Positions 1-61,873 of a stretch of 64,000 nucleotides of DNA are shown one piece after another (position 1 is the stretch's first letter; the number at the start of each line of letters is the position of its first letter). Under the pieces are notes generated by a model. The model made no database searches. It was given only the letters and a program-made list of their open reading frames with translations, and was not told where the DNA came from. Position numbers and translations under genes: made by a program. The DNA comes from Ophelia neglecta (Eukaryota). Location of the stretch: positions 21,142,001 through 21,206,000 of the forward strand of contig OZ260667.1 in the NCBI GenBank assembly GCA_965285935.1. The letters are read 5' to 3'.

Positions 1-40897
<40,897 letters not shown>

Positions 40898-40900
<3 letters not shown>

Positions 40901-41400
40901 GTGTCATCCTACATATTCCGTTCGTAGTGTATGTCCATGTTATGAAGAAGATTTCACACACAAAACAATATGAGCGACAGATGCAAACACATACCACCTA
41001 TCTACTCATATTATTCGGGGTGTTGGCAGTTTCCCGATGTCGACATTTTGTCCAAGCTGCTTTCAAAGTTGTGTTAAATATCCATGAAAGTTACACAGAT
41101 AAGTCCTAATTATCTACTGCGGGTTTGCTGTTATTGGCAATGGTAGTCCATACAGCTTGTGACGTACTTCCGGTCTAGTTTTTACTCGGCACAAGTCCAC
41201 TGAAAGCTGATTAATACTGTAAAATGTCAGAAATCATGCAGAAATAAAGTCCGACAGCCACAGAGTCGACTTATATTCTGACTGTGCTATAAGGCTTGCA
41301 ATCCAATCTAGTTTGTCAAACTAGGTCGACTGCCTCCTCGATGTATTGGTCATTGGTCACGCCTGCCGCATTCGTACAAAGGACTGGCCACTAGGTTGGT
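40898..41400 (-). promoter_or_regulatory. Probable promoter and first exon (5' UTR plus ATG only) of the SEA-Fz-SRCR gene
   Basis: Minus strand reads gga tga cac ATG|GTAAGT, with an in-frame upstream stop. A phase-0 splice to the acceptor ttaaag|GTCAATATG at 25649 gives MVNMENPGY in frame. ETS-like CCGGAAGT and a TATAAG lie upstream. Motif blocks are shared with 46620-47160. Confidence 0.55.
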
Positions 41401-43156
41401 CTCACCTCCTGTGTGTACACGGGCGGAAATAGGAAAGGTTATTCCAGTCTACCCCCTCATCTCCTTCTGGGAGATTTAATCGAGAGCTCATAAATGAAAA
41501 TGACTCAACCGATTTAAATCCCCCTAAAGGATAAAAAAAAAAGGCTAGCCTGCAAACAATTAAGTGGGCGAAAATAGGCGGTCGTCCTAGTCTTTACAGA
41601 AATAGTGAAATAAATACTCTCGAGAACGGCATATACCAACATTATAATAACATACTAAAGGGCGAAGGGCTGGGGTAATCTAGGAATCTAGCCATCGATC
41701 TATGGTTCAGTATATATATGGGAAAGACAGTATTTTATTTTGCAAATTTGTATTAGTATTGAAACGCAGAAAGGTGGGAAAATATTTGAATTTTGACAGG
41801 TATTCATGCTGCAAAAGAACCATCAGTTTTATTATACTATTTAATAATCTAACATTCAGCAACCCAATATGCCTGGCGATCAAGCAATGTGCTTCACTTC
41901 AATAGATTCACTGCGTCATAATTAAAGCTCATTTTGTTTAGACTAAATTATAACCGTTTTTTTATGTTAATGAGGCGGCCAGCCCCACTGGTCGACCCCA
42001 TCCCACCCGACAAACCCTCTCGTATGAACAAGTCATGATAGCTGGAGAATGATAATAGGCAATTAAATGCGTGTCAAATGTGTTTTATTTATCCAAATAA
42101 CAAAATATAAATAGGATACAATTTTTTCGATTATTTCCGTGTTATTATCGCCATATGGGACAAGTTCAAATATTATTGTCATTCACATAGTCGACCTCAA
42201 GACTGAAATTTTACCGCTCTTGTAATTGAAAAGAATCAAAAGTTACTTATTATTTTTTAAAGTGGTGTGTCTTTTTAATTCATATAAAACAATGTATCTG
42301 GTATAATTAACCATTGGTATCATTGTATTCATTAATATTATTTCCTTTTCGCGGATATCACTTACCTAATTCTATCATAGATAGCCACCTAGACATTTCC
42401 TAGGCACCGAAGCCACCTAGATATTTCCAACACTAATAGCCACCTAGATAGTTTCATCACGGAGAGCCCCTTGACAAATAATTCTCCATGTTGCATCCAT
42501 TTCAGTTGACTCTACAACTGAGATAGAGATAAAAGGATAGGATAAAAGAAATATCATATCTTAATAATCCATAAACCATAGTGTAAGTTGACTATAGGAT
42601 CATTAAATTGTCCAATACTCACATTTGAATTGATTAACCCAAACTAAAAATTAGTTTAGTTATGTTATCGTGGGTTCTCATATAAGTCCCTAATTTCCAG
42701 GTTTTGCTGTAGATTAATTAGTTTTCTTATATTGGTTTCATATTATATTGATATAACTCTGTCTTAATAATTTATTTAGTGATTAATTCTCGATGAATTC
42801 GTGCATGCGCTTATATTAATTTTCTGGCAAGATGAGATTATTTACACATAATTTTAATTTTGCACAGTATGCTTGGCTAAGTGAGAAAATTAATTACTGT
42901 ACAGAGTTAAACAAGGAGCGAAATTAAACTTGTACAATGGCGCGCAGTAAGCAGGTATGTTTGGGAGGGACAAATTTGAAAAATTGTCAGTATTCTGTCT
43001 CATGAAAAACGCAAATCACCTTTCTATATATATTTTACTGGAGGAATAAGTTAAGCTCAATCAGGCGCTTACAACCCTAAAATTGGCAGGCACAGGCCTA
43101 GATCCGATAAGTATAGCCTCAATATGGATTGAAGATCCAAGAAAACTACAGTGATT

Positions 43157-43323
43157 CAGTGAAACATGCTTTAAAGACCACCCCTATAATCAGCCCACCT
43201 GTCAATTCAGTCCACTACTCTGAAGACCATAATGCACACTTTCAATGTAACATAACCTGTGTTAAATATCAACTGTTTAATCAGACAGATATTTATGTAG
43301 GTCTTAATTTACGGGTTTCACTG
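43157..43323. mobile_element. MITE, same family as 15283-15461 (opposite orientation)
   Basis: CAGTGAAAC...GTTTCACTG|TA. The internal TTTAAAGACCACCCCTATAATCAG matches the reverse complement of part of the 15283 element. Confidence 0.7.
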
Positions 43324-44238
43324 TATATATAACTAGCCTTCAGGGGCCACTTAATTGGAGCTAGTCCAGCGCATGGTGAACATTTGAACGATAATGTTGC
43401 AGGAGGCCTTAGCTGCAAACTTACCGATTTTGTCCGAAAACTCTTCTATGACCATTAAATGCCATTGTGCTCATCCATAATAAAATACTCCGTGTCGGCG
43501 AGTGGTATTTTCCTATCAGAAAAACACCTGTATTTACTCGTTTGCATAGACCAACATTTAATTTGACTGCCTTCGTCTTGGGTCAAGTTCGCCAGGATTT
43601 ATTCCCAGGCGGGTCATACATTAAACACAAAAATAGATACTGACGATCGATAATGCTCCCTTAGAATGGCAACGTATAGTAAATGTAAAATCCTAATTTA
43701 AAAAAGCGAAATGCGTATTGAATGTCAAGGTCGCACTCCCTCAATACTGTCTTACGAAAACCAAGACATAAAAAAATACAGACCTAGCTTAGGCTTTTTT
43801 TTATATATCTTCGATCGAAAATCTGAAAAATTAATAGTTATATATATAGTATATGCTGTCTTTGATCATGGTGTCTTTTAACGTGTTGTGATCGAATTCA
43901 ATTCCTCCAGACAGCTTTCACCCAGTTAGTATTTTCGTGTTTACTGGGATCGCCGGTTTACAAGCCTTTCAGTGTTAACAATGTCCACCTCAGTAATTAG
44001 TAACGGCCTTGACCGCGAGACCAAAACAAAGGTATCTTATCAAGGCAAAGCGGGCATGCAAACATGAGTGCTAAGAAAATAATAATTGTAGACTAGAAAT
44101 GGTGTATTGCCGACGCGTACAATGCCACTGAATGGATATAGAACAGTTATAGGACTGAATTTGTAAGTTTGTATTTAATTTTATCATCCAAATTAAAGCT
44201 ACACTGTTTGAAGCACCTGTCTGTAAAATATGAGTCTA

Positions 44239-44387
44239 CCGTGAAGGCTAGTCAAGGAACTGACCGCATTATGTAGGTGACCTTTATAGGCAGTTAACAC
44301 GGGGAAAATCGAGACCGGGCTATTATTGGTGTACTTAGAGGGCAGGTGACCTTATTACACAGTTGACCACAAACACAGGTTTCCCTG
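44239..44387. mobile_element. Degenerate TA-flanked MITE inside the repeat unit (a related one at about 50731-50904)
   Basis: TA|CCGTGAAGG...CAGGTTTCCCTG|TA with internal AGGTGACC repeats. The paralogous block at 52200 lacks it. Confidence 0.55.
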
Positions 44388-44645
44388 TAACTTTATTTAT
44401 GTATATGGCTGATTAGGGAAATGTATTATTCCACCTAATGACCTCATGCCAAACAAGACGGATGTATTAAATGTAGAGTATAGACCCATACATTTATGGC
44501 CAGGGTGTGGGTCAAATTAAATGCCATTATTTAATTAATGCCATTAAATGGGACGCTCACCACATTTTTTATGCCAGCTATCAATAGGGTAAAATTTTCT
44601 CATTACCCTGGTAGATTAAAAAATACCATATATATATGGCCATAT

Positions 44646-44755
44646 AGATTATTAAGTACGTTGGATATAAGAATCTAGATTATTAAGTACCTGGGATATA
44701 AGAATCTAGATTATTAAGTACCTGAGATATAAGAATCTAGATTATTAAGTACCAT
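44646..44755 (+). repeat. 31 bp tandem repeat, 3.5 copies (also near 53370 and 62423)
   Basis: TAGATTATTAAGTACCTGGGATATAAGAATC repeated. Confidence 0.9.
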
Positions 44756-46619
44756 ATTATAATAGTGACCTGGGTAAAATGAATGCTGATGCCGGGCACG
44801 GCTGAAGGACGATCATTGTTTTTTTGTTTCCCCACAGTAGGTAACCTGATAATTTGTGCATAATGGCATAATTACAAACGAAGAGATTGTGTTGCATGCA
44901 AATAACAGCATAACAGTCTTACAGCAGGCATGCTGCGTATATACAAATGGCACAATTTGGAATAAGGTTACCTGCTGCGATGAATTAAAAGGTTGCGCGA
45001 GGTAAGCTTAACCCACCCAACTGAGGGCAGCCGCAAAAAAAAAACACTCACAAAAACGACATTACCTTTTTAAGGAGCTTCTATTAGTCATGGATGTTTT
45101 TATAATTATCTAATTAATATTATTATTGGAAACATGCATTTGAATAATAATTCATGCTCAGGTTGTGAGAGGGCTTAACTCTGGGTTTTTTTCTATTAAC
45201 GTTAATTTATGCGGTTAATAGCCAAAGAACCTTGAGCACAGAGTTAGGCTATTGACTAAACACGCAAATATCAGGATCGCGTACAACTGTATTTCTGCCT
45301 CATTATTATGGACATAATTATCTACCTTTGCTATTATAGCCTACAGTGGGCGCGAAATGTAACGATGCCTTAATTTACCCTAATATAACCACAACCTCGA
45401 ACACTCATTGGAAGTTGCTATTATGTAGGAATTGAAGCTTCTTTGAACCAGAAACTCGTGTTTTGTCATGGACATTGGTCAAGGTTTCCCTATCTGCAAG
45501 GAGATTATGGTAAATCGATGCTTTGATAACAATAGGTTTTGAGATATTTTGCCATTCAGCTTATGAATTAAGCTAATGAATTCAGCTATAATATCATGCT
45601 TTAGTTTTATTTTGCCTCACAATGACCAGGCAACCTGACAGTTACAATTGAACTCGAGCGACATTTATTTGTCTATCATTTTCTATCATTTCAATTTCAA
45701 ACTTGGTACAATTCTCGCTGGTACTGCCCTTTTCACAATGAACTTGGTCACTTTTAAGGAGGTATTGGATTACAAAAGGTAGGTCAAAGTTGTCAACGCC
45801 TGGAGGGGAAGAGGAAGGGCGCTTCAAGCATCTCTGAGGTGGCAGGAGAGGGGGAGGGGCGCTTCATGCGACTTAGAGATGGATTATGTTGAGGGGTTCT
45901 TACTAACCGATAGATCACATCAGGAAAAGTGGGCAGCACCACCAAACAAGATCCTAAACCTAAATAGTTAAATGAGAGATGTATCGGTGGAGTTTATGGC
46001 GATTATTCCCTGCCGAGTAGTCCACAGTGTCCAGGGTATTGCAATGTCTTCACACTCTAATCATTATATAGGAAAATAATTCATTAATATCATAGAATGC
46101 GACATGTTCGGACTATCAGCTGTCAAGCCGGGTTACACCGCCTCATTGTGTTCTGGTGTATAGTCAAATGATTAATCAATTAAAAGAGTTGTCCCAGATA
46201 TTTGTCTATATAGGGCATTGAGGGAAAATAAAGTATGAAGTATTAGATAAATCAGTGTTTTAATCATATTGTATCAAGTTACTCAAGAGAAAGACTAATG
46301 TTGTTTTACTGACATATTTTCTTTGAGTGTTTTTTTTTAATCCTTATCATTGGTTTCTTTGTCAGGACGATGTTGCTGTGGTGTTTAAGATTACACACAC
46401 CGCCTCTAAACCGAAAAATGGAACCCTGTGGGGCCACAGTTGGTGCTCTAGGGTGGCAAAAAAAATTCTGACCCGCCAGTCACCACGGATTGCGCCTATG
46501 ATCACATGGAACATGTGCCTCCCCCTGTCAGCCAGGTGTTGATATCCAGGTGTACTAGCAGGCAGACCGCCCATTGTTATCCGGCGAGGGCACTTGAAGC
46601 CGCCTTCTTCAGCCAAACT

Positions 46620-47156
46620 GCCAATTCACCTAGTGTCCAACCCACCGTGACGAGTGACCACATACGTTACACAACACTGTACAAACAGTGCTTGACAGTG
46701 GGTTTCTTGCCATTGCCACAGTATAAGTCAACACTGAAATCAACGTGGTTCATTTGGGCCGGACTCTCGCATTTAACGCTGCAAATTGATATTTCTTGGA
46801 CTTGTCAGGACAAAAGTTTGACCGGAACTGCTTGGCCGTGTGCTTTATATACACATGCGCAGCTACTGAGTTAGCTAGCATAAGTCGCAGTGTTTACTTG
46901 TGGATAAACAGGACATATTAATATTATCATACAGGACTTCTTCGGAATATTTTACTATTCACATTCTCATTCAGGACTTTATGGAGCATTTTACTAAACG
47001 GACACTCCATTGGAGGACGCTTTGGATTCTGAGGAACTACAACTACGCCCCGAACAATGTGACATGATAGATGTTAATTATATTTTCATCTGTCACTCGT
47101 ATTGTTTAGTGTGTAACACTTTATCAGAATATTGACATAAGCTGTAACGAGACATG
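46620..47156 (+). promoter_or_regulatory. Paralogous promoter and ATG-terminated first exon, copy 1
   Basis: Homologous to the reverse complement of 40898-41400. Ends GAGAC ATG|GTAAGT (ATG at 47154-47156). Confidence 0.55.
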
Positions 47157-47609
47157 GTAAGTTAATATTATTTATTTTATCTGTGGTTCGTCACCTGTCT
47201 TCATGGTTCCTTTGAACCTCCTGGTTTCTACTCCCTCGGTTGCTTGGCTTGTTTAGCACAGGCCCTTATATATTTTTCATTGTATAGCTGCTTATTTGCT
47301 TATTCCAACTTTGATAGCTGACAACTGATTTCGACATTTCTTTTGCTATCATGTATATCTGTTAATTACAGTTGTGATTACCACTTCATGTTGCAGATTT
47401 TCTCGGCTGCCTCCATTTCTTAGGGTGTTTTTGATTTAAGGACACCCCCAACCCCTTGTTTAGCATTACTTCATGCAAATTAATAACATTCGGCTAGCTT
47501 AGAGTTGGTTTTTAGTGACTTTGAGCATTTCAAGGCGCCTAGAAGTGATTGAAAGCACTGAATGGCGATATATATTTTTGCTTTAGGACATTTTTCGTCA
47601 GAAAACCAA

Positions 47610-48110
47610 TAAAATGCTGATTTGATCAGAAAAGCTTACACATGGCTTTTCAGAATTACCCATGTACTTTAAATGCATTTTTTCATTTATGTGCTAGTAA
47701 TATCATCCCGAAGCACTTGCGGAAGTTTCAGAGCTCTAGGATTGACTTTAAAAGACCATTTATTTATGTTTCCGTCAAAAATGTTGATTTTTATTAGAAA
47801 AGCATTTAAAGTGGCTTTTCAGAATGATCCCATGTGCTTTTCAATGCAGTTTTTCGTTTGTGTGCTTGTAATATCATTTCGAAGCTTTTGTTGGAGTTTC
47901 AGAGCTCTGGGATTAATTTTAAAATGCCAATTTTAATATTTTTTGGTAAAATGTTGTTTTTCATCATAAAAGCCTAAAAAATTGCTTTTCCGAATGACCC
48001 CATGCACTTTTCAATGTATTTTTTATATTTTGTTTTTGTAATGCCATTCTGAAGCGTTTGTGAAAGTTTCGAAGCTCTAGCGTTATTTTTAAAGGCCCAT
48101 TTTTTTATTT
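47610..48110 (+). repeat. ~168 bp tandem repeat, 3 diverged copies (also about 56695-57190)
   Basis: AAAATGYTG...GCTTTTCAGAATGACCCATG...AAGTTTCAGAGCTCT recurs near 47611, 47777 and 47948. Confidence 0.85.
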
Positions 48111-48453
48111 ATTGTGCTGAAATCATATTTTTATTCATATTCTCACTGTATTGCAGTAGTAGGGCTCTTAGTAGAACTATCGGTAGACAGTAGGGGCTAA
48201 ACGAGAATGTGTAATGCATGTATTTAATTATTTATTTTATTTCAGGCAAAAAAAAAAAAAAAAATCGGAATATGAAAAATTTCAATCCGCCCCTCTCTCC
48301 TCCCTTCCTGTCCTCTCCCTCTCCTCTCTGCCTCCATCTCCGTCTCCCCTCTCTGGCTCATCTCGGTTCTGCTCAGCTCCCTCCTGATCTCTTCTGCTGG
48401 AATGAAACACATATCAATGTTAGTACAGTGCGACGACTTCAATTTCATTTTCT

Positions 48454-48525
48454 TACCTCTGTCCAGGATCGAACCCCGGACTCTAGCGTGGCAGGCCCGC
48501 ACTCTATCCACTCACCCACGTAGGC
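48454..48525 (-). pseudogene. tRNA-Gly(GCC)-like element (pseudo-tRNA or SINE head), copy 1
   Basis: GCCTACGTGGGTGAGTGGATAGAGTGCGGGCCTGCCACGCTAGAGTCCGGGGTTCGATCCTGGACAGAGGTA has an A box, a B box and the tRNA-Gly GCCTGCCACGC anticodon loop. Acceptor and D stems are mismatched. Confidence 0.75.
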
Positions 48526-49295
48526 GCGCCTGAGTGAATAAAGTTGGAACTTTGTGCAATGATGTTAACCGGAAGTACTCTACTATAGTGCAAACGTGCC
48601 CGCATGGTGGCAGCACGTGGTCTGCTTCACTACTCACAATGAAAGTAGTATCTTAAAACTACTTCCCTCTCGTCTGAGAGGATCAAGTTGTATCTTCTTG
48701 TCATGACTTTAACCGGAAACTACTTGTCTATAGTACATTTTTTTAGCAGGGTGGCAGCACGGGGTTTGTTTTACTACTTACAATGACGCAGTATGAAAAA
48801 CTACTTTCCAGTGGATCCTTCATAACATTATATGCATTTTTAAATGGGCAGTTTTTATTTCGAACTTCACCACATAACATTATCAAAGATTTTGGCTGCT
48901 GAAAGAATATTTTAGCCAGCTACCAATTTAAGGATATAAGGCATTTCAAAACATACAGGGGGTAATTGGAAACACTGAGTAAAAACAAATAGCGAACACA
49001 ATAATAGTCTGCAGAAATGTACACACAAAAGAATGCGGGTGACAGATAAAAATATGTAACATCTATCAATCCGCATGATTCTATGCGTTTCTGCAGTATC
49101 GCCAAGTATGTAGATTTATCTAAAATGCTTTCAAATTGGGTAAAGGAAGTCGTACAAAGTATGTCCTATTAATCCACACCCGGCCAGGTTGATAAATCAT
49201 ATTCCACTCGAAGCTAAGTACATGAAGGTCTGCCCTGGCTGGTCTCAATTGTCTGCTTATGTCCAAGTTCCTTGCCATGGTGTTCCGATCTAGCT

Positions 49296-49311
49296 TGACC
49301 TAGTATGACCT
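49296..49311 (-). promoter_or_regulatory. Perfect DR4 nuclear-receptor response element (also 58361-58376)
   Basis: TGACCT agta TGACCT equals AGGTCA-N4-AGGTCA on the minus strand. Function is not shown. Confidence 0.4.
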
Positions 49312-52300
49312 CCGCATACGTCGAATGTAGTAAAATCTTGAGAAAATACATAAATTAGTCCAAATTGCTTCAGTTTCAAGTAGTAAAATCCATACTGGTC
49401 TTGTTAAAAATTGTATAATGTGTTGCCGGCCTGCGTGCGAAAGCATGGTCACTCGTCTCGCTCGACTGAAATTGGCAGCTTGCTTGAACACAACACCGTC
49501 CGAGTTTATGACATGAGCACTAGGTAGATTTTGACCTTGTATACACCAGGGCGCAGTACGTATTACGTACGTACAACGTAGAACGATGTATCTGAAGGGC
49601 GTGTCTGTGTGGTATATGAAAGACGACAGCCGTCCACCCGGGATGACCATTCCATTCGAACTGGACCGCTTTCGGACATCCTAACCCCTCTTACCGGTCC
49701 TCTCTGCAGCCTTAAGACAAGGAAGAGGGGGGGGGGGGTCCTAATGATCCTCCTGAAAAAATAAAAAAAGGACCCCTGTGCAAAGATCTACACATACCCG
49801 GGTTATTTAATGATTCAGGCCATGTCCTAAAATAAAATACTCCCGTCAGGGTTATACAGTCTTACCCATATGCTGATACTTTGATAATCGTTGTTTCATT
49901 TATGTCTCTTCAGTTTAAGACTGAAATGACCAAGACCAAATCCAGCTTTCAGGAACCCGGCTTAGCCATTTGAGAACGATGAAGCACTTAAATCATGATT
50001 TTAATTCAAGTTGTGAGTCAAGTTTGTTACAAGAGACTGGGACCAGATGGTTCAATTATTTATTCTTGAGTTATTAAAGCCGAGCCTGAGTTTCAAAATT
50101 CACGACTTACATGCATGATATATATTCGTTTTAAAAAATGGATGCTAAATCTAATATCACTTTGACTGTGCTTAGTTTATTCCTCAGTAGAAATGAGATT
50201 TTGAATCTTGGGCCCTTCCTACAATAGTTTACCAAGCCAATATACTGCCAGTCTGTGAATTGATGGAATTTGTGGCCGACAATCCACACATTGACAGATA
50301 AGAATAAATCGCCCCATGAATGCTTTGAAGTAAAAACCTCCCCCCCCCCTCCCCCCACCGGCATAGGGTTAACCTCATGACCAATGGACGAGGTGTGTTT
50401 GGGGATTTACATGGCATTCAACATCAGACAGGGTACCCCACCCTGTCACACATGGCCAGTGTGGTAATCCATGTGAAGGTGTATCGATTACAAGGGTCTT
50501 GTAATTTGGGTCCAAAAATTCTCTAAGAGAAAAACTGATAACATTGAAATAGACGGCATCACAGAGAATGGTTCTAAATGTCCATGCATACATGATGCTG
50601 AATTAGGGTTTATAAATCAATACTATTTTATGGTCATGGTAACAGGTGTTAACTCCGCTAGGTGGTAAGACGGTCGATTAATTGCACAAACATAGGCATG
50701 TGAAATTGCCCATCTCTTTATACTGGCATCAAAAGTGAAACCTATCTAATCAGGAAAGTCAAGGGAAAAAATTGACCACATTATGCAGGTGGCCTTAATA
50801 GACAGGTCAGTTAACATAGGGATCGGCTTTTATTTTCTTACCTTTGTAGGGCTGGGGACCTTATTACCTTATTACAAAGGTGACCGCAAATATAGGATTC
50901 ACTGTATATATATCATATACATGCACATGCACACAGGAAAATGACCCACTCTATATTAGCTATGCTGGTCAATCCCAATAATTAAAACTTGGTATCACCC
51001 TGGTGACATATATGAGTTAACTTAAATTAGATGAAGGATTATCTACAATGTACAGTGTTAATCGTCAAAAGAAATTGGTGAGTCGCACCAGCGATAACTT
51101 AGGGTAGAAGTATGATTAATGGCCTAGTAACAATAAGCCCAGAGGTGGCTCACCTATGAAATACGCCCCTCCCGAGAAGCACATATTGAATTCCGCTAAT
51201 AAATATCCCGGAAAATGTGGATTTATCCATATCTTGATAACAACATCCGAATACAAATATTTTGAACTCAGGTGTACGCGTTGTATAGAAGTTCGCGGTC
51301 ATGCGATCTCGACAATCGAGGCTTGGACACAGGTCAGCGTAGTTTTAGGGCTCCCCTTTTATTCCTAAAGGGGGGGGGGTAAGTTTTCTATGTTTTCACA
51401 TTAGTACCATTGTAAATTTTTCTACCGGTGTCATTTATGTATCTTAGCTGCTTCCCGTCCTGATCACATAACATATCAATTTAGTTTCCTACTATTGATT
51501 AATTAACCCTCGATTGGTGTGCTGATAATAAACACCTGAAAAATGGGATGAGAAGATATGCATACTCTTATTTATTTAAAATGCATTGTTTTAGCCCGTG
51601 TTATTAACTAGTGTTTATTATCTCCACTGGAACATTTATTTAGTAGGGCCCATTACTCGGGGAGTTTTCCAACTGGTCGATAGGTTGCAATGGGCATTCT
51701 ATTGTTCAAGAAGGGAGTAACAAATGATAATTGGAACTATCGACTTTTCGGTACATCCCCTCTTCTCAAAATGGTTTGAGAACATAGTATATTCTCGGTT
51801 ATCTGATTTTAATAATGATAATCTGTTTTTATAAAATTTCCCATTTTTGTCCCCTGTTTGGCGCTTCATTTTACAACCACATGTATGTTATTTGTTCATA
51901 AGTCCCCCCCCCCCCCCCGGTAATCATTTCAATGTATACATTACGCTGGTCTCACCCGAGTAATTAGTAACGACCTTGATAGCGAGATCCAAAACAAAAC
52001 ATCAAGACATATGGCGGTCTGCAAACATGTCTATATTAATGATACGTAAATCACATTTGGATATTAGGAATGCTGTATATGGACGCGTGTAATGACACTT
52101 AATGGATATAGAACAGTTATCTGAATCTGTAAGTTATAGTTTATAATATCATCGAAAATCACTGTAATGTGTGAAGCACCTGTCTGTACAATAGGAGTCT
52201 AGTTCTGTATACAAATGTGGCCGATCTCCCATATTGGTTCTAATTGATTTTAAGCGAAATTTGGGCAGGTATTCTTCGCGCTATCCGGTATCATTTTCCT

Positions 52301-55300
52301 ATCATATGGGTCATCATGTTTATAATGATACTATCAAATGGATCCCTCTTATGTTGTCAAATGGATCATCACATTTGTATGGTTGTCAGATGATCAAATT
52401 TTGCCCATGACACATGTAGATGATACAGACCTCATATGGCCATCCCCGTACACATACCTACCTATGATTAATTGGTTGGCAAGTAAGTTTTCTTGTAGAA
52501 TCAAATGATACCTTTTGGGACAGAAGAAGTATTGAGGGAGGGGGAGGGGAAACCAGTGCAGTTTAAGCAATAATACAGATATAAATTTACCCCAAACACC
52601 TTAGTTGTCGTGGTACTAGGCACCCCTATAGTAATATAATAAACTTAGATAAAGATGGTTGGATAACTTATAATAGTAAGATTGGGGGGGGGGGGGTACT
52701 CCCATCTATGGCACGGTTAGATATCCCCGCGGTCGGGTACCTGTATCTTTATCCCTATCAAATGGATTATCTTTTTTATAATACTGATGCTATCAAATGG
52801 GTCCCTTTTTCACATTTAAACAAATGGTGTTTTGCCGACGCGTACAATGCCACTGAATGGATATAGAACAGTTATAGGACTGAATTTGTAAGTTTGTATT
52901 TAATATTATCATCCAAATTGAAGCTTCACTGTGTGAAGCACCTTTCTGTAAAATATGAGTCTACCGTGAAGGCTAGTCAAGGGACTGACCGCATTATGTA
53001 GGTGACCTTTATAGGCAGTTAACACGGGGAAAATCGAGACCGGGCTATTATTTGGTGTATTTAGAGGGCAGGTGACCTTATTACACAGTTGACCACGAAC
53101 ACAGGTTTCCCTGTAACTTTTTTCTATGTATATGGCTGATCAGGGAAATGTATTATTCCACCTAATGACCTCATGCCAAACAAGACGGATGTATTAAATG
53201 TAGAGTATAGACCCATACATTTATGGCCAGAGTGTGGGTCAAATTAAATGCCATTATTTAATTAATGCCATTAAATGGGACGCTCACCACATTTTTTATG
53301 CTAGCTATCAATAGGGTAAAATTTTCTCATTACCCTGGAAGATTAAAGAATACCATATATATGTCCATATAGATTATTAAGTACGTTGGATATAAGAATC
53401 TAGATTATTAAGTACCTGGGATATAAAAATCTAGATTATTAAGTACCTGAGATATAAGAATCTAGATTATTAAGTACCATATTATAATAGTGACCTGGGT
53501 AAAATGAATGCTGATGCCGGGCACGGCTGAAGGACGATCATGGTTTTTTGTTTCCCCACAGTAGGTAACCTGATAATTTGTGCATAATGGCATAATTACA
53601 AACGAAGAGATTGTGTTGCATGCAAATAACAGCATAACAGTCTTGCAGCAGGCATGCTGCGTATATACAAATGGCACCATTTGGAATAAGGCTACCTGCT
53701 GCGATGAATTAAAAGGTTGCGCGAGGTAAGCTTAACCCACCCAACTGAGGGCAGCCGCAAAAAAAAACAAAAAACGACATTACCTTTAAAGGAGCTTCTA
53801 TTAGTCATGGATGTTTTCATAATTATCTAATTAATATTATTATTGGAAACATGCATTTGAATAATAATTCATGCTCAGGTTGTAACTTACAAGGCTTAAC
53901 TCTATGTTTTTTTCTATTAACGTTAATTTATGCGGTTAATAGCCAAAGAACCTTGTGCACAGAGTTAGGCTATTTACTAAACGCGCAAATATCAGGATTG
54001 CGTACAACTGTATTTCTGCCTTATTATTATGGACAGAATAATTATCTACCTTTGCTATTATAGCCTACAGTGGGCGCGAAATGTAACGATGCCTCAATTT
54101 ACCCTAGTATAACTACAACCTCGAACACTCATTGGAAGTTGCTATTATGTAGGAATTGAAGCTTCTCTGAACCAGAAACTCGTGTTTTTGTCATGGACAT
54201 TGGTCAAGGCTTCTGTATCTGCAAGGAGATCATGATGAATCGATGCTTTGGTAACAATAGGTTTTGAGATATTTTGCCATTCAGCTTATGAATAAAAGCT
54301 AATGAATTTAGCTATGATATCATGCTTTAGCTTTATTTTGCCTCACAATGGCCAGGCAACCTGACAGTTACAATTTAACTCGAGCAAGAACCAGAAACTC
54401 GTGTTTTGTCATCGACATTGGTCAAGGCTTCTCTATCTGCAAGGAGATCATGATGAATCGATGCTTTGGTAACAATAGGTTTTGAGATATTTTGCCATTC
54501 AGTTTATGAATAAAAGCTAATGAATTTAGCTATGATATCATGCTTTAACTTTATTTTGCCTCACAATGGCCAGGCAACCTGACAGTTACAATTGAACTCG
54601 AGCAAGAACCAGAAACTCGTGTTTTGTCATGGACATTGGTCAAGTTTTCCCTATCTGCAAGGAGATTATGGTGAATCGATGCTTTGGTAACAATAGGTTT
54701 TGAGATATTTTTGCCTGACAGTTACAATTGAACTCGAGCGACATTTATTTGTCGATCATTTTCTATCATTTCATTTTCACACTTGGTACAATTCTCGCTG
54801 GTACTGCACTTTCACTAATTGAACTTAGTCACTTTTTAGGAGGTCTCGGATTAAAAAAGGTATTTCAAAGTTGTCAACGCCTGGAGGGGAAGAGGAAGGG
54901 CGCTTCAAGCGTCTCGGAGGTGGCAGGAGAGGGGGGAGGGGCGCTTCATGCGACTTAGAGATGAATTATGTTGAGGGGTTCTTACTAACCGATAGATCAC
55001 ATCAGGAAAAGTGGGCAGCACCACCAAAAAGGATTCTAAACCTAAATAGTTAAATGAGAGATGTATCGTTGGAGTTTATGGCGATTATTCCCTGCCGAGT
55101 AGTCCACAGTGTCCAGGATATTGCAATGTCTTCACACTCTAATCATTATATAGGAAAATAATTCATTAATATCATAGAATGCGACATGTTCGGACTATCA
55201 GCTGTCAAGCCGGGTTACACCGCCTCATTGTGTTCTGATGTATAGTCAAATGATTAATCAATTAAAAGAGTTGTCCCAGATATTTGTCTATATAGGCCAT

Positions 55301-55701
55301 TGAGGGAAAATAAAGTATGAAGTATTAGATAAATCAATGTTTTAATCATATTGTATCAAGTTACTCAAGAGAAAGACTAATGTTGTTTTACTGACATATT
55401 TTCTTTGAGTGTTTTTTTTTAATCCTTATCATTGGTTTCTTTGTTAGGACGATGTTGCTGTGGTGTTTAATATTACACACACCGCCTATAAACCGAAAAT
55501 TGGACCCCTGTGGAGCCAAAGTTGGTGCTCTAGGGTGGCAAAAAAAATTCTGACCCGCCAGTCACCACGGATTGCGCCTATGATCACATGGAACATGTGC
55601 CTCCCCCTGTCAGCCAGGTGTTGATATCCAGGTGTACTAGCAAGCAGACCGCCCATTGTTATCCGGCGAGGGCACTTGAAGCCGCCTTCTTCACCCAAGC
55701 T

Positions 55702-56239
55702 GCCAATTCACCTAGTGTCCAACCCACCGTGACGAGTGACCACATACGTTACACAACACTGTACAAAACAGTGCTTGACAGTGGATTTCTTGCCATTGCC
55801 ACGGTATAAGTCGACACTGATATCAACGTGGTTCAATTGTGCCGGACTCTCGCATTTAACGCTGCAAATTGATATTTCTTGGACTTGTCAGGACAAAAGT
55901 TTGACCGGAACTGCTTGGCCGGGTGCTTTATATACACATGCGCAGCTACTGAGTTAGCTAGCATAAGTCGCAGTATTTACTTGTGGATAAACAGGACATA
56001 TTAATATTATCATACAGGACTTCTTCTGAATATTTTACTATTCACATTGTCATTCAGGACTTTATGGAGTATTTTACTAAACGGACACTCCATTGGAGGA
56101 CGCTTTGGATTCTGAGGAACTACAACTACGCCCCGAACAATGTGACATGATAGATGTTAATTATATTTTCATCTGTCACTCGTATTGTTTAGTGTGTAAC
56201 ACTTTATCAGAATATTGACATAAGCTGTACCGAGACATG
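55702..56239 (+). promoter_or_regulatory. Paralogous promoter and ATG-terminated first exon, copy 2
   Basis: As copy 1. Ends GAGAC ATG|GTAGGT (ATG at 56237-56239). Confidence 0.55.
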
Positions 56240-57523
56240 GTAGGTTAAAATTATTTATTTTATCTGTGTTTCATCACCTGTCTTCATGGTTCCTTTGAAC
56301 CTCCTGGTTTCTACTCCCTCGGTTGCTTGGCATGTTTAGCACAGGCCCTTATATTTTTTTCATTGTATAGCTGCTTATTTGCTTATTCCAACTTTGACAG
56401 CTGACAACTGATTTCGACATTTCTTTTGCTATCATGTATATCTGTTAATTACAGTTGTGATTACCACTTCATGTTGCAGATTTTCTAGGCTGCCTCCATT
56501 TCTTAGGGTGTTTTTGATATAAGGACACCCCCAACCCCTTGTTTAGCATTACTTCATGAAAATTAATAACATTCGGCTAGCTTAGAGTTGGTTTTTAGTG
56601 ACTTTGAGCATTTCAAGGCGCCTAGAAGTGATTGAAAGCACTGAATGGCGATATATATTTTTCCTTTAGGACATTTTTCGTCAGAAAACCAATAAAATGC
56701 TGATTTGATCAGAAAAGCTTACACATGGCTTTTCAGAATTACCCATGTACTTTAAATGCATTTTTTCATTTATGTGCTAGTAATATCATCCCGAAGCACT
56801 TGCGGAAGTTTCAGAGCTCTAGGATTGACTTTAAAAGACCATTTATTTATGTTTCCGTCAAAAATGTTGATTTTTATTAGAAAAGAATTTAAAGTGGCTT
56901 TTCAGAATGACCCCATGTGCTTTTCAATGCATTTTTTCGTTTGTGTGCTTGTAATATCATTCCGAAGCTTTTGTAGGAGTTTCAGAGCTCTGGGATTAAT
57001 TTTAAAAGGCCAATTTTAATATTTTTTGGCAAAATGTTGTTTTACATCATAAAAGCCTAAAAAATGGCTTTTCCGAATGACCCCATGCACTTTTCAATGT
57101 ATTTTTTATATTTTGTGCTTGTAATGCCATTCTGAAGCGTTTGTGAAAGTTTCGGAGCTCTAGCGTTATTTTTAAAGGCTCATTTTTTATTTATTGTGCT
57201 AAAATCATATTTTATTCATATTCTCACTGTATTGCAGTAGATCTATCGGTAGACAGTAGGGCTAAACGAGAATGTGTAATGCATGTATTTAATTATTTAT
57301 TTTATTTCAGGCAAAAAAAAAAAAAAAAATCGGGAAATATGAAAAATTTCAATCCGCCCCTCTCTCCTCCCTTCCTGTCCTCTCCCCCCTCTCCTCTCTG
57401 CCTCCATCTCCGTCTCCCCTCTCTGGCTCGTCTCGCTTCTGCTCAGCTCCCTCCTGATCTCGTCTGCTGGAATGAAACACATATCAATGTTAGTACAGTG
57501 CGACGACTTCAATTTCAATTTCT

Positions 57524-57595
57524 TACCTCTGTCCAGGATCGAACCCCGGACTCTAGCGTGGCAGGCCCGCACTCTATCCACTCACCCACGTAGGC
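57524..57595 (-). pseudogene. tRNA-Gly(GCC)-like element, copy 2
   Basis: Same sequence as 48454-48525. Confidence 0.75.
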
Positions 57596-60500
57596 GCGCC
57601 TGAGTGAATAAAGTTGGAACTTTGTGCAATGATGTTAACCGGAAGTACTCTACTATAGTACAAACTTGCCCACATGGTGGCAGCACGTGGTCTGGTTCAC
57701 TACTCACAATGAAAGTAGTATCTTGAAACTACTTCCCTCTCGTCTGAGAGGATCAAGTTGTATCTTCTTGTCATGACTTTAACCGGAAACTACTCGTCTA
57801 TAGTACATTTTTTAGCAGGGTGGCAGCACGGGGTTTGTTTTACTACTTACAATGACGCAGTATGAAAAACTACGTTCCGGTGGATTCTTGATAACATTAT
57901 ATGCATTTTTAAATGGGCAGTTTTTATTTCGAATTTAACCACATAACATTATCAAAGGTTTTGGCAGCTGAAAGAATATTTTAGCGAGCTTAAGGATATG
58001 AGGCATTTCAAAACATACAGGGGGTAATTGGAAGCACTGAGTAAAAACAAATAGCGAACACAATAATAGTCTGCAGAAATGTACACACAAAAGAATGCGG
58101 GTGACAGATAAAAATATGTAACATCTATCAATCCGCATGATTCTATGCGTTTTTGCAGTTTCGCAAAGTATGTAGATTTATCTAAAATGCTTTCAAATTG
58201 GGTAAAGGAAGTCGTACAAAGTATGTCCTATTAATCCACACCCGGCCAGGTTGATAAATCATATTAATCCACTCGAAGCTAAGTACATGAAGGTCTGCCC
58301 TGGCTGGTCTCAATTGTCTGATTATGTCCAAGTTCCTTGCCATGGTGTTCCGATCTAGCTTGACCTAGTATGACCTCCGCATACGTCGAATGTAGTAAAA
58401 TCTTGAGAAAATACATAAATTAGTCCAAATTGCTTCAGTTTCAAGTGGTAAAATCCATACTGGTCTTGTTAAAAATTGTATAATGTGTTGCCGGCCTGCG
58501 TGCGAAAGCATGGTCACTCGTCTCGCTCGACTGAAATTGGCAGCTTGCTTGAACACAACACCGTCCGAGTTTATGACATGAGCACTAGGTAGATTTTGAC
58601 CTTGTATACACCAGGGCGCAGTACGTATTACGTACGTACAACGTAGAACGATGTATCTGAAGGGCGTGTCTGTGTGGTATATGAAAGACGACAGCCGTCC
58701 ACCCGGGATGACCATTCCATTCCAACTGGACCGCTTTCGGACATCCTAACCCCTCTTACCGGTCCTCTCTGCAGCCTTAAGACAAGGAAGAGGGGGGGGG
58801 GGGGTCCTAATGATCCTCCTGAAAAATAAAAAAAGGAACCCTGTGCAAAGATCTACACATACCCGGGTTATTTAATGATTCAGGCCATGTCCTAAAATAA
58901 AATACTCCGGTCAGGGTTATACAGTCTTACCCATATGCTGATATTTTGATAATCGTTGTTTCATTTATCACTCTTCAGTTTAAGACTGAAATGACCAAGA
59001 CCAAATCCAGCTTTCAGGCACCCGGCTTAGCCATTTGAGAACGATGAAGCACTTAAATCATGATTTTAATTCAAGTTGTGAGTCAAGTTTGTTACAAGAG
59101 ACTGGGACCAGATGGTTCAATTATTTATTCTTGAGTTATTAAAGCCGAGCCAGAGTTTCAAAATTCACGACTTACATGCATGATATATATACAATTCGTT
59201 TTAAAAAATGGATGCTAAATCTAATATCACTTTGACTGTGCTTAGTTTATTCCTCAGTAGAAATGAGATTTTGAATCTTGGGCCCTTCCTACAATAGTTT
59301 ACCAAGCCAATATACTGCCAGTCTGTGAATTGATGGAATTTGTGGCCGACAATCCACACATTGACAGATAAGAATAAATCGCCCCATGAATGCTTTGAAG
59401 AAGACCTCCCCACCCCTCCCCCCTCCGGCATAGGGTTAACCTCATGACCAATGGACGAGGGTGTGTTTGGGGATTTACATGGCATTCAACATCAGACAGG
59501 GTACCCCACCCTGTCACACATGGCCAGTGTGGCAACCCATGTAAAGGACGGTCGATTACAACGGACTAGTAATCGGAATTGGGTCCAAAAATTCTCTAAG
59601 AGAAAAACTGATAACATTGAAATAGACGGCATCACAGAGAATGGTTCTAAATGTCTAATCTAAATTGCCCATCTCTTTATACTGGTATCCAAAGTGAAAC
59701 CTATCTAATCAGGACAGTCAAGGGAAAAAATTGACCACATTATGCAGGTGGCCTTAATAGACAGGTCAGTTAACACAGGCTTAAATAGGGATCGGCTTTT
59801 ATTTTCTTACCTTAGTAGGGCAGGGGACCTTATTACCTTATTACAAAGGTGACCGCAAATATAGGATTCACTGTATATATATCTTATACATGCACATGCA
59901 CACAGGAAAATGACCCACTCTATATTAGCTATGCTGGTCAATCCCAATAATTAAAACTTGGTATCACCCTGGTGACATATATGAGTTAACTTAAATTAGA
60001 TGAAGGATTATCTACAATGTACAGTGTTAATCGTCAAAAGAAATTGGTGAGTCGCACCAGCGATAACTAAGGGTAGAAGTATGATTAATGGCCTGGTAAC
60101 AAAAGGCCCAGAGGTGGCTCACCTATGAAATACGCCCGAACCGAGAAGCACATATTGAATTTCGTTAATAAATATCCCGGAAAATGTGGATTTATCCATA
60201 TCTTGATAACAACATCCGAATACAAATATTTTGAACTCAGGTGTACACGTTGTATAGAAGTTCACGGTCATGCGATCTCGACAATCGAGGCTTGGACATA
60301 GGTCAGCGTAGTTTTAGGGCTCCCCTTTTATTCCTAAAGGGGGGGGGGGTGGTAAGTTTTCTATGTTTTCACATAAGTACCATTGTAAATTTTTCTACCG
60401 GTGTCATTGATGTATCTTAGCTGCTTCCCGTCCTGATCACATAACATATTAATTTAGTTTCCTACAATTGATTAATTAACCCTCGATTGGTGTGCTGATA

Positions 60501-61873
60501 ATAAACACGTGAAAAATGGGATGAGAAGATATGCATACTCTCATTTATGTAAAATGCATTGTTTTAGCCCGTGTTATTAACTAGTGTTAAGTATCACCAC
60601 TGGAACATTTATTTAGTAGGGCCCTTTACTCGGGGAATTTTCCATCTGGTCCTTAGGTTGCAATGGGCATTCTATGATTCAAGAAGGGAGTAACAAATGA
60701 TAATTGGAAACTATCGACTTTTCGGTACATCCCCTCTTCTCAAAATGGTTTGAGAACATAGTATATTCTCGGTTATCTGATTTTAATAATGATAATCTGA
60801 TATTATAAAATTTCCCATTTTTGTCCCCTGTTTGGCGCTCCATTTTACAACCACATGTATGTTATTTGTTCATAAGTCCCCCCCCCCCCCCCCCCCCCGG
60901 TAATCATTACAATGTATACATTACGCTGGTCCCACCCGAGTAATTAGTAACGACTTTGACAGTGAGATCCAAAACAAAACATCAAGACATATGGCGGTCT
61001 GCAAACATGTCTATATAAATGATACGTAAATCACATTTGGATATTAGGAATGCTGTATATGGACGCGTGTAATGACCCTTAATGGATATAGAACAGTTAT
61101 CTGAATCTGTAAGTTATAGTTTATAGTATCATCGAAAATCACTGTAATGTGTGAAGCACCTGTCTGTACAATAGGTGTCTAGTTCTGTATACAAATGTGG
61201 CCGATCTCCCATATTGGTTCTAATTGATTTTAAGCGAAATTTGACAGGTGTATTGCGTTTAGACCCCGGTGGAGATGGGTGGGGGTGACTCCCATGGCCA
61301 TCTAGGGCAGGTATTCTTCGCGCTTATGCGGTATCATTTTCCTATCATATGGGTCATCATGTTTATAATGATACTATCAAATGGATCCCTTTTATGTTGT
61401 CAAATGGATCATCACATTTGTATGGTTGTCAGATGATCAAATTTTGCCCATGACACATGTAGATGACACAGACCTCATAATTTATGGCCATCCCCGTACA
61501 CATACCTACCTATGATTAATTGGTTGGCAAGTAAGTTTTCTTGTAGAATCAAATGATACCTTTTGGGACAGAAGAAGTATTGAGGGAGGGGGAGGGGAAA
61601 CCAGTGCAGTTTAAGCAATAATACAGATATAAATTTACCTCAAACACCTTAGTTGTCGTGGTACTAGGCACCACTATAGTAATATAATAAACTTAGATAA
61701 AGATGGTTGGATAACTTATGATACTAAGATTGGGGGGGGGGGGAGGGGTACTCCTATCTATAGCACGGTTAGATATCCCCGCGGTCGGGTACCTGTATCT
61801 TTATCCCTATCAAATGGATTATCTTTTTTATAATACTGATGCTATCAAATGGGTCCCTTTTTCACATTTACAC

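What the first reader, a model, noticed from the sequence alone, without database searches (positions are those of the whole stretch)
40898..47160. Head-to-head inverted paralogous promoters and first exons
The reverse complement of 40898-41400 aligns in order with 46620-47160. Matching blocks: ACCTAGTGGCCA/ACCTAGTGTCCA; CGTGACCAATGACCA/CGTGACGAGTGACCA; TATAAGTCGACTCTG/TATAAGTCAACACTG; TGGACTTGT..GACCGGAA in both; CCCCGAATAATATGA/CCCCGAACAATGTGA; CATCTGTCGCTCATATTGTTTTGTGTGT/CATCTGTCACTCGTATTGTTTAGTGTGT; and ACATG|GTAAGTTA in both. Similarity fades just after the donor, as expected for a constrained exon. The minus copy splices in frame to exon 2 of the large gene. This points to an old inverted duplication with a divergently transcribed partner on the plus strand, which the ORF track cannot show.
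Basis: partly seen in the sequence, partly recalled or inferred. Interest (0 to 1): 0.8.

Follow-up and report, generated by a model that had tools for sequence, protein, structure and literature searches.

The report
High-copy repeat with conserved RNA hairpin
The two inverted "promoter plus first exon" blocks are really similar, but they are two members of a non-coding repeat family with about 3,000 copies that shares a conserved strand-specific hairpin and a splice-donor-like site; they are not the 5' ends of two paralogous genes.

Summary
Revcomp 40867-41023 matches 47045-47184 (67% identity, E 4e-13), and the upstream promoter-like parts also align collinearly (z = 7.1).

- Block 1 has at least 41 copies on three chromosomes.
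- Block 2 lies in a roughly 9.06 kb tandem unit (44097-64000) that recurs in many arrays on this chromosome.
- The shared 27-nt hairpin arm occurs 2,474 times exactly and 3,122 times with up to 3 mismatches. DNA word depth over it is about 3,000 times the single-copy level.
- No Pfam domain was found in 38-53 kb.
- No paralog of the Fz/SRCR protein lies in the rest of the window or in the next 50 kb, and its exon-2 peptide is unique in the genome.
- Within a subfamily, homology runs about 2.7 kb past the "donor", through internal tandem repeats.
- At other loci, two family-1 arms form head-to-head palindromes.

The conserved core is about 285 bp: a roughly 70-nt hairpin (22 pairs, 98.5% paired, compensatory changes, 140 G-U cells against 1 A-C cell) followed 42-59 nt later by GTAAGT.

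My best reading is a DNA-amplified repeat whose unit is, or derives from, a small non-coding Pol II transcription unit. Transcription could not be tested because no RNA runs were available. An earlier scan note on this window (s1-732047) had already recorded the 9 kb array.

The parts
38210..41466 (-). Solitary 'arm' of repeat family 1. In sense order it holds a promoter-like block, the hairpin, a donor-like site, spacer, 139-bp tandem repeats and a terminal region.
   Evidence: Homology to copies on C8, C9 and C12 runs from 41427-41466 down to 38245, and about 35 nt further across an indel.
41268..41275 (-). TATA-like motif TATAAGTC of block 1.
   Evidence: Read directly. It is a conserved island in 24 family-1 copies and aligns with 46722-46729.
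40956..41026 (-). Core hairpin, type A.
   Evidence: R1 covariance model 110 bits, E 1.6e-21. Folds at -30.8 kcal/mol.
40890..40901 (-). Donor-like site ACATG|GTAAGT; last exon base 40898.
   Evidence: In family 1 the GT is changed (GC, GG, AA and others) in more than half of the 24 copies.
39154..39865 (.). Internal 139-bp tandem repeat of the family-1 arm.
   Evidence: It is also present in family-1 copies elsewhere.
44097..64000 (+). Tandem array of ~9.06 kb units of repeat family 2, about 96% identical. It continues about 4.2 kb beyond the window.
   Evidence: Self-blastn. L025 shows the array ending near C12:21,210,200. Collinear units at 78-90% identity occur in other arrays on C12.
46590..47211 (+). 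Family-2 promoter-like block plus the core module. The TATAAGTC motif is at 46722-46729.
   Evidence: There is a sharp common 5' homology boundary at 46590-46600 in 8 loci.
47044..47114 (+). Core hairpin, type B. The donor-like site follows, with last exon base 47156.
   Evidence: R1 127 bits, E 3.6e-25; the antisense strand scores only 23.7 bits.
47611..48114 (.). Internal ~170-bp tandem repeat of family 2.
49002..49179 (-). Partial module, type C. The hairpin is 49021-49091, with an extended ~33-bp stem and no donor.
   Evidence: R1 116.5 bits. Folds at -39.6 kcal/mol, z -6.0. It is the best-conserved piece against a 78%-identical array (83.7%).
56127..56197 (+). Core hairpin, type B, in the second 9 kb unit. 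The donor-like site has last exon base 56239.
58083..58153 (-). Type C hairpin in the second 9 kb unit.
25473..25649 (-). It has its own ATG at 25643.
   Evidence: Acceptor, ATG and donor read. The 57-aa peptide is unique in the genome. Fz and SRCR domains lie downstream.

Best explanation
Both blocks are copies of one large non-coding repeat superfamily, and they belong to two different subfamilies.

The shared core is a ~285 bp module. It holds a ~70-nt hairpin whose 3' arm is almost invariant and whose 5' arm changes only in ways that keep pairing on one strand. A 5'-splice-site-like GTAAGT follows 42-59 nt downstream.

In the two subfamilies present in the window, about 400 bp of promoter-like sequence (TATA, ETS-like CCGGAA) precedes the core, and internal tandem repeats (139 or 170 bp) follow it.

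Units multiply at the DNA level in three forms: tandem arrays (1.36, 1.84 and 2.32 kb on C1; ~9 kb on C12), head-to-head palindromes, and tail-to-tail pairs. This behaviour is foldback- or satellite-like.

The head-to-head pair in the window is a solitary family-1 arm lying next to the first unit of a family-2 array. It is not an inverted duplication of a gene's 5' end.

Inferred, not shown: each unit is, or descends from, a small RNA polymerase II transcription unit read TATA -> hairpin -> 5' splice site. Its constrained product would be the hairpin RNA, either a pri-miRNA-like precursor or another structured non-coding RNA. The 5' splice site would act as a U1 site or an occasional donor.
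For: Copy number:
- Block 1 gives 41 scored matches from 157 candidates, at 76-88% identity, on C8, C9 and C12.
- Block 2 gives 40 scored matches from 1,557 candidates.
- The 27-nt arm pattern has 2,474 exact hits (reversed control 0) and 3,122 hits with up to 3 mismatches (control 32).
- Summed DNA word depth in the 47000-47199 bin is 88,651, against about 20-36 in single-copy bins.

Non-coding character:
- No meaningful Pfam hit in 103 frames of 38000-53300 or in 50 frames of three other arrays.
- No paralog of the large protein nearby.
- The exon-2 peptide is unique.

Architecture:
- 9.06 kb tandem units.
- C1 arrays built from 780 bp of unique sequence plus n x 483-bp repeats.
- Palindromes of two family-1 arms, for example L039 3010-8426.
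- Convergent pairs.
- The C1 type shares only 46956-47211 with family 2.

Hairpin:
- 22 pairs, 98.5% of cells paired, against 27-58% when the partners are slid.
- 30 cells changed on both sides, reached by 0 of 500 shuffles.
- 140 G-U cells against 1 A-C cell, so the pairing is constrained on the sense strand only.
- The covariance model scores 110-127 bits on the sense strand and no more than 24 bits on the antisense strand.

Promoter motifs and the family-2 donor are conserved islands.
Against: - No RNA data exist for this organism in the tools, so transcription, the TSS, splicing and any small-RNA product are all untested.
- About 2,270 of the ~3,100 copies are one young, homogeneous subtype. 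The near-invariance of the arm is therefore partly recent amplification; the case for constraint rests on the comparison across subfamilies.
- The donor GT is lost in more than half of the sampled family-1 copies, and it reads GTACAT in the sampled C1 array units (L027, L028).
- The sequences used for covariation are related to one another, which inflates the shuffle statistics.
- G-T pairs are also tolerated in single-stranded DNA hairpins, so a DNA-level role is not excluded.
- No target-site duplication or transposase partner was found, so the mode of spread is undefined.
Confidence: 0.6

Rival explanations
1. Exapted promoter. The solitary family-1 arm is a repeat copy, but it is used as the promoter, or an alternative promoter, and 5' non-coding exon of the Fz/SRCR gene, with 40898 spliced to 25649. 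This is compatible with the repeat reading and rescues part of the first reader's idea.
For: The arm's sense strand points at the gene. A GTAAGT donor is intact at 40898. Exon 25649-25473 has a good acceptor and looks like the start of the coding region, so an upstream 5'-UTR exon is plausible. TATA and ETS-like motifs are conserved.
Against: The arm lies 15 kb upstream, with other repeats in between, including an RT fragment at 31654-32580. Dozens of other family-1 copies have no such gene downstream. The in-frame argument is empty, because exon 2 carries its own ATG. No RNA evidence is available.
Confidence: 0.2
2. DNA-level element. The hairpin acts in single-stranded DNA during transposition or replication of a foldback-like or rolling-circle-like mobile element. 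The resemblance to a promoter and a splice site is incidental or a relic.
For: Long inverted arms with internal tandem repeats and dispersed arrays in both orientations. Central 139-170-bp repeat arrays resemble the tandem-repeat-carrying Helentron derivatives of oyster (PMC7492417). G-T pairs are tolerated in DNA hairpins.
Against: No subterminal inverted repeat of 8 nt or more joins the two ends of the window's arm. No clear target-site duplication flanks the L039 palindrome. The hairpin is internal, about 450 bp from the inner boundary and 2.7 kb from the outer one, not terminal. No transposase or Rep/helicase domain was seen. The TATA -> hairpin -> GTAAGT order on the constrained strand fits an RNA better.
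Confidence: 0.17
3. One reading: an old inverted duplication created two paralogous genes whose promoters and ATG-only first exons face away from each other.
For: Real collinear inverted similarity of about 500 bp.
Against: High copy number. No plus-strand paralog within 88 kb. Unique exon 2. The plus copy is part of a non-coding 9 kb tandem unit. The two blocks belong to different subfamilies.
Confidence: 0.02
4. Spliced-leader RNA genes: tandem arrays of short genes whose exon ends in AUG before a GT donor and is trans-spliced onto mRNAs.
For: Tandem arrays of 1.4-2.3 kb with thousands of copies and a donor after ...ATG. The C1 subtype has an AATTTTGG Sm-like motif about 75 nt after the donor.
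Against: The 42-59 nt between the hairpin and the donor differ in sequence and length between subtypes, whereas a leader should be the conserved part. The Sm-like motif is absent from types A and B. There is no Rfam match. The donor is degenerate in many copies.
Confidence: 0.03

Closest known systems
Foldback-type repeats (Drosophila FB, sea-urchin TU elements; recalled from memory, not looked up here)
   Same: Long inverted arms of 2.2-2.7 kb that contain internal tandem repeats. Copies are dispersed and clustered in both orientations. No coding capacity was found in the sampled copies.
   Different: In these copies the unique, promoter-like and hairpin-bearing parts lie at the centre and point outward. 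No target-site duplication was found. Many copies are plain head-to-tail arrays or single arms.
Tandem-repeat-carrying non-autonomous Helentrons (Cg_HINE of Crassostrea gigas, PMC7492417)
   Same: Short central arrays (2-6 monomers) of 139-170-bp repeats between conserved flanks. Related flanks carry unrelated monomers in different subfamilies. A palindrome lies in one flank.
   Different: No 11-12-bp subterminal inverted repeats were found. The hairpin is far from either end. The flanks are kilobase-sized and promoter-like. No Helitron protein was seen.
Tandem microRNA gene arrays with a promoter in each repeat (zebrafish miR-430, Xenopus miR-427; recalled from memory. only listed titles and abstract openings of miR-430 papers, and none was read.)
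   Same: Many tandem units, each with a promoter-like region and a hairpin of pre-miRNA size. One arm is nearly invariant, the loop varies and pairing is preserved.
   Different: No small-RNA evidence and no match to any Rfam family. The copy number is one to two orders of magnitude higher. Units also form palindromes and carry satellite repeats.
Macrosatellites with a transcription unit in each repeat (for example human D4Z4; from memory)
   Same: Kilobase-scale units (here ~9 kb) in chromosome-specific arrays, each with promoter-like sequence.
   Different: No ORF was found in the unit. The unit shares its core with a far more abundant 1.4-2.3 kb satellite.

Membership tests
Paralogous divergent gene pair (inverted duplication of a gene's 5' end) | The blocks are low-copy and specific to the two genes. 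| tested here: not met
   At least 41 and at least 40 scored copies. The core has 2,474-3,122 copies. Word depth is about 3,000x.
Paralogous divergent gene pair (inverted duplication of a gene's 5' end) | A paralogous coding partner lies downstream of the plus copy. | tested here: not met
   tblastn of all minus-strand frames of the large gene found only a SINE-like repeat in window 26001-64000 and in the next 50 kb. No Pfam domain in the 9 kb unit.
Paralogous divergent gene pair (inverted duplication of a gene's 5' end) | Spliced transcripts use the donors at 40898 and 47156. | not testable with these tools
   No RNA run is served for this organism. The three runs that were laid are DNA-like contigs.
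Foldback transposon | Long terminal inverted arms with internal tandem repeats. | tested here: met
   L039 has arms 3010-5215 and 5697-8426. L026 and L040 hold head-to-head pairs. In the window itself only a single arm is present.
Foldback transposon | Target-site duplication flanking the arms. | tested here: inconclusive
   The flanks of L039 show no obvious duplication, and the boundaries are uncertain by a few nt. Only one complete element was examined.
Helentron / HINE non-autonomous element | 11-12-bp subterminal inverted repeats and a 3' palindrome next to the terminus (PMC7492417). | tested here: not met
   No inverted match of 8 nt or more between 38150-38330 and 41380-41520. The hairpin is internal.
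LTR retrotransposon (block = LTR) | Direct repeats flanking gag/pol-derived sequence. | tested here: not met
   No RT, integrase or gag domain in the units. Copies occur head-to-head and in plain tandem.
Animal microRNA gene cluster | A hairpin of about 60-80 nt with a 22-35-bp stem, with arms more conserved than the loop and pairing kept by compensatory changes. | tested here: met
Animal microRNA gene cluster | Discrete ~22-nt reads from both arms with a 2-nt offset, or membership of a known miRNA family. | not testable with these tools
   No RNA runs. No Rfam family matches, so it is not a known family. The sequence is not found in the paper library.
Spliced-leader RNA gene | A short, strictly conserved leader directly upstream of the donor, and an Sm site downstream. 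| tested here: not met
   The segment between hairpin and donor varies in length and sequence between subtypes. An Sm-like motif occurs only in the C1 subtype.

The most novel reading that the evidence does not exclude
The ~3,000 units are a family of self-contained hairpin-RNA genes, miRNA-like or another small structured RNA. Many would carry their own Pol II promoter and a U1 site, having been amplified as satellites and palindromes. That would be a much larger small-RNA gene array than miR-430 (the comparison is from memory), with the invariant 3' arm as the functional product.
Probability: 0.15. Interest if true: 0.75.

Novelty: new variant of a known kind. Interest (0 to 1): 0.4.

Why it matters
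For annotation: these 'promoter plus ATG-only first exon' modules will keep being mistaken for the variable first exons or alternative promoters of neighbouring genes. Other first-stage notes on this genome may describe the same family, though that is untested. The modules should be masked or labelled as a repeat family.

For biology: this is a repeat whose only deeply conserved part is a strand-specific, covarying hairpin placed between a TATA-type promoter and a 5' splice site, in thousands of copies. It is a concrete and cheap target for small-RNA and CAGE sequencing. If it is transcribed, it would show how a satellite can spread a functional RNA gene, or spread promoters that neighbouring genes could capture.

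Tried and rejected
- Rfam, gathering thresholds on the whole window and E-value mode on both blocks: only chance-level hits.
- tRNA/tmRNA scan: none.
- Pfam on all frames of at least 45 aa in 38000-53300 and at least 70 aa in three other arrays: nothing meaningful.
- RNA evidence: the look-up of sequencing runs returned only three DNA-like runs from one sample. Read laying on 41200-47199 therefore gave copy-number information only. The donor at 40898 lay outside the 6,000-letter limit.
- Exact-sequence search of the paper library, 5 words from the hairpin arm: 0 papers.
- Metagenome scan with the 27-nt pattern: 0 hits.
- ESM Atlas search on an Fz exon, tried to place the organism: uninformative.
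- Spliced-leader, LTR and Helentron readings: considered and rejected for the reasons given in the membership table.
- Alternative pairing of the invariant arm with the donor region: not conserved between types.
- The joined exon 1 + exon 2 model was not built or searched. Exon 2 was searched alone, by reference.


Full report

Yes. blastn with word size 7 aligns 40867-41023 (minus) with 47045-47184 (plus) at 67% identity over 159 nt, E 4e-13.

The upstream, promoter-like halves were not picked up by blastn, but a local alignment of 41040-41470 (revcomp) against 46570-47040 scores 29. The 300 dinucleotide shuffles give 14.2 +/- 2.1 (maximum 22), and the wrong orientation gives 13. The alignment runs collinearly from the CGTGAC motif through TATAAGTC to GACCGGAA.

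**2.

- 46400-47400 recurs at 55482-56483 with 97% identity.
- A shorter piece recurs on the minus strand at 49003-49177 and 58065-58239.
- A whole-window self-comparison shows that 44097-64000 is a tandem array of ~9.06 kb units, about 96% identical.
- Each unit holds one plus-strand block and, 1.9 kb downstream, one minus-strand partial copy.

**3. Copy number in the genome.**

The window is C12:21142001-21206000 of a 762 Mb assembly.

- Block 1 (40860-41420) gave 41 scored matches out of 157 candidates, at 76-88% identity, on C8, C9 and C12. Many lie in arrays with 8 or 18 kb spacing, or in head-to-head pairs.
- Block 2 (46600-47200) gave 40 scored matches of 1,557 candidates, all on C12 between 14.5 and 28.8 Mb, mostly in arrays with ~9 kb spacing.
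- The best-conserved 27 nt, ATCTGTCNCNCNNATTNTTTNGTGTGT, occurs 2,474 times exactly (reversed control 0) and 3,122 times with up to 3 mismatches (control 32).
- About 2,270 of these copies are one subtype, which forms arrays with 1,357, 1,840 and 2,323 bp periods on C1. Each unit is about 780 bp of unique sequence plus 1.2 to 3.2 copies of a 483-bp repeat.
- Independent DNA evidence comes from the three public runs that hold this region. The summed word depth of the 47000-47199 bin is 88,651 in X1, against about 20-36 in single-copy bins. The ratio of roughly 3,000 agrees with the pattern count.

**4. Extent and architecture of the repeats.**

Against other family-1 copies, the window's block-1 homology does not stop at the donor. 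It runs from 41427-41466 down to 38245 in five independent comparisons, and about 35 nt further across an indel. On the way it passes a 139-bp tandem repeat at 39154-39865.

At other loci, two such arms stand head to head. L039 (C8:41.19 Mb) has arms 3010-5215 and 5697-8426, with the promoter-like blocks at the centre and both outer ends at the equivalent of window ~38210. L026 and L040 are similar. Convergent pairs also occur (L029, L033). No clear target-site duplication flanks L039.

The window's single arm has no inverted repeat of 8 nt or more between its two ends.

Family-2 homology covers essentially the whole 9 kb unit in other arrays (L022, 84-89%). It has a sharp common boundary at 46590-46600 in front of the block and a 170-bp tandem repeat at 47611-48114.

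The abundant C1 subtype shares only 46956-47211 with family 2. That stretch is about 95 nt upstream of the hairpin, the hairpin itself, the donor, and about 55 nt beyond. This ~285 bp module is the common denominator of the superfamily.

About 2.6 kb of mostly single-copy DNA separates the window's family-1 arm from the first unit of the family-2 array (depths).

**5. Coding content and the proposed partner gene.**

- None of 103 open frames of at least 45 aa in 38000-53300 has a meaningful Pfam hit.
- None of 50 frames from arrays on C8 and C9 does either.
- The minus-strand gene to the left has Fz and SRCR domains.
- tblastn of all its frames against window 26001-64000, against all fetched loci, and against the 50 kb to the right of the window found only a SINE-like repeat.
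- The array ends about 4.2 kb beyond the window. The next plus-strand coding candidate seen by eye is about 39 kb to the right of the window's end and resembles a glutamate-receptor ligand-binding domain; it is not a paralog.
The 'in-frame' junction therefore says little.
- The exon's 57-aa peptide is unique in the genome, while block 1 has dozens of copies. The block is not the promoter of a gene family.

**6. What is actually conserved: a hairpin.**

All five window copies fold into the same hairpin, at -25 to -40 kcal/mol with z-scores of -2.7 to -6.2.

An alignment of 36 distinct copies from four subtypes (A2) gives a 22-pair consensus:

- 98.5% of 792 cells form standard pairs, against 27-58% when the 3' partners are slid by 1-3 columns.
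- Four pairs show changes on both sides, covering 30 cells; 0 of 500 shuffles reach that number. The sequences are related, so these shuffle figures are an upper bound on significance.
- The complementary strand would therefore be only about 81% paired.
- A covariance model built from A2 scores 110-127 bits on the sense strand and at most 24 bits on the antisense strand. It finds exactly five copies in the window.

The 3' arm is nearly invariant, the 5' arm varies with wobble or compensation, and the loop varies in sequence and length. No Rfam family matches. The sequence occurs in no paper of the library and in no metagenome contig.

**7. Promoter and donor.**

In 24 family-1 and 18 family-2 copies, the TATA region, the CCGGAA region and the stretch before the hairpin are conserved islands. 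These are the same islands that survive between the two families.

The donor differs between families:

- In family 2, ACATG|GTAAGT is almost invariant.
- In family 1, the GT is GC, GG, AA or otherwise lost in more than half of the copies.
- In the sampled C1 array units (L027, L028) it reads GTACAT.

The hairpin, not the donor, is the constrained core.

**8. Interpretation.**

Shown:
- a high-copy, non-coding, DNA-amplified repeat superfamily;
- a strand-specific structured core.

Inferred:
- The order TATA, hairpin, GTAAGT on the constrained strand, together with the G-U asymmetry, suggests that the unit is, or was, a Pol II transcription unit producing a hairpin RNA.
- The size and conservation pattern resemble an animal pri-miRNA, but nothing here shows processing.

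Rivals:
- A DNA-level role for the hairpin in a foldback-like or rolling-circle-like element remains possible.
- Occasional capture of a copy as a host promoter remains possible, including capture of the 40898 donor by the Fz/SRCR gene.
- The spliced-leader and LTR readings fail defining features.

**9. Limits.**

- No RNA run for this organism is available.
- Read laying was limited to 6,000 letters and to DNA-like contigs from one sample.
- Only one complete palindrome was inspected for target duplications.

Earlier scan notes: s1-732047 had already noted the 9 kb array on this window, which I confirm. s1-733622 proved unrelated. s1-733707 and s1-733649 may describe other arrays of the same family, but I did not test them.

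Noticed in passing
window 1-25649 (minus strand): A large multi-exon gene with several Fz and SRCR domain exons and Thr/Pro-rich mucin-like stretches. The probable first coding exon is 25649-25473, with an ATG at 25643 and a Lys/Glu-rich tail. The architecture is reminiscent of corin-like type II membrane proteins.
   Followed up: partly
window 44200-44400 and 44642-44753: A very high-copy short repeat. DNA word depth in bin 44200-44399 is about 41,000-51,000 in runs X1 and X2, which is more than 1,000 times the single-copy level. Nearby is a 31-bp tandem repeat that also forms a near-perfect inverted repeat.
   Followed up: no
window 43000-43400 and 15235-15513; also L023, L024, L025, L026: A SINE-like dispersed repeat with word depth of about 1,400-2,700. 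It was the only thing the large gene's frames matched elsewhere, and it gives spurious tblastn hits.
   Followed up: no
window 31654-32580 (minus strand): A 309-aa open frame that looks like the C-terminal part of a non-LTR retrotransposon reverse transcriptase. It had no Pfam hit at E 0.01.
   Followed up: partly
window 33125-33478 and 33660-33978: Two blocks of a short-period (~28 bp) minisatellite, about 85-90% identical to each other.
   Followed up: no
G000 C1:47026339-47034274: An array with a 1,133-bp period carries the segment that follows the hairpin in the C1 subtype. It gave no exact hit to the hairpin-arm pattern except at its two ends, so it may be a deletion derivative of the unit that lacks the hairpin.
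   Followed up: no
window 38210-38300 and the outer ends of arms in L026, L038, L039, L040: The outer terminus of the family-1 arm carries splice-like signals on both strands. The antisense strand has a long pyrimidine tract plus CAG and a CTG|GTAAGC donor. The sense strand has a CAG acceptor, a 23-27-nt mini-exon, a GT and AATAAA motifs. This could be a small terminal exon of the unit, or an exon trap for transcripts entering from outside.
   Followed up: partly
L027 3130-3170 (C1 array unit): An AATTTTGG Sm-site-like motif lies about 75 nt after the donor-like site, at the start of each 483-bp internal repeat. It is absent from the two subfamilies present in the window.
   Followed up: partly
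right of window, C12:21245367-21245990 (plus) and C12:21226136-21226450 (minus): Open frames resembling an ionotropic glutamate-receptor ligand-binding domain and a CAP/SCP domain. These are the nearest coding candidates beyond the array. The assignment was made by eye only.
   Followed up: no
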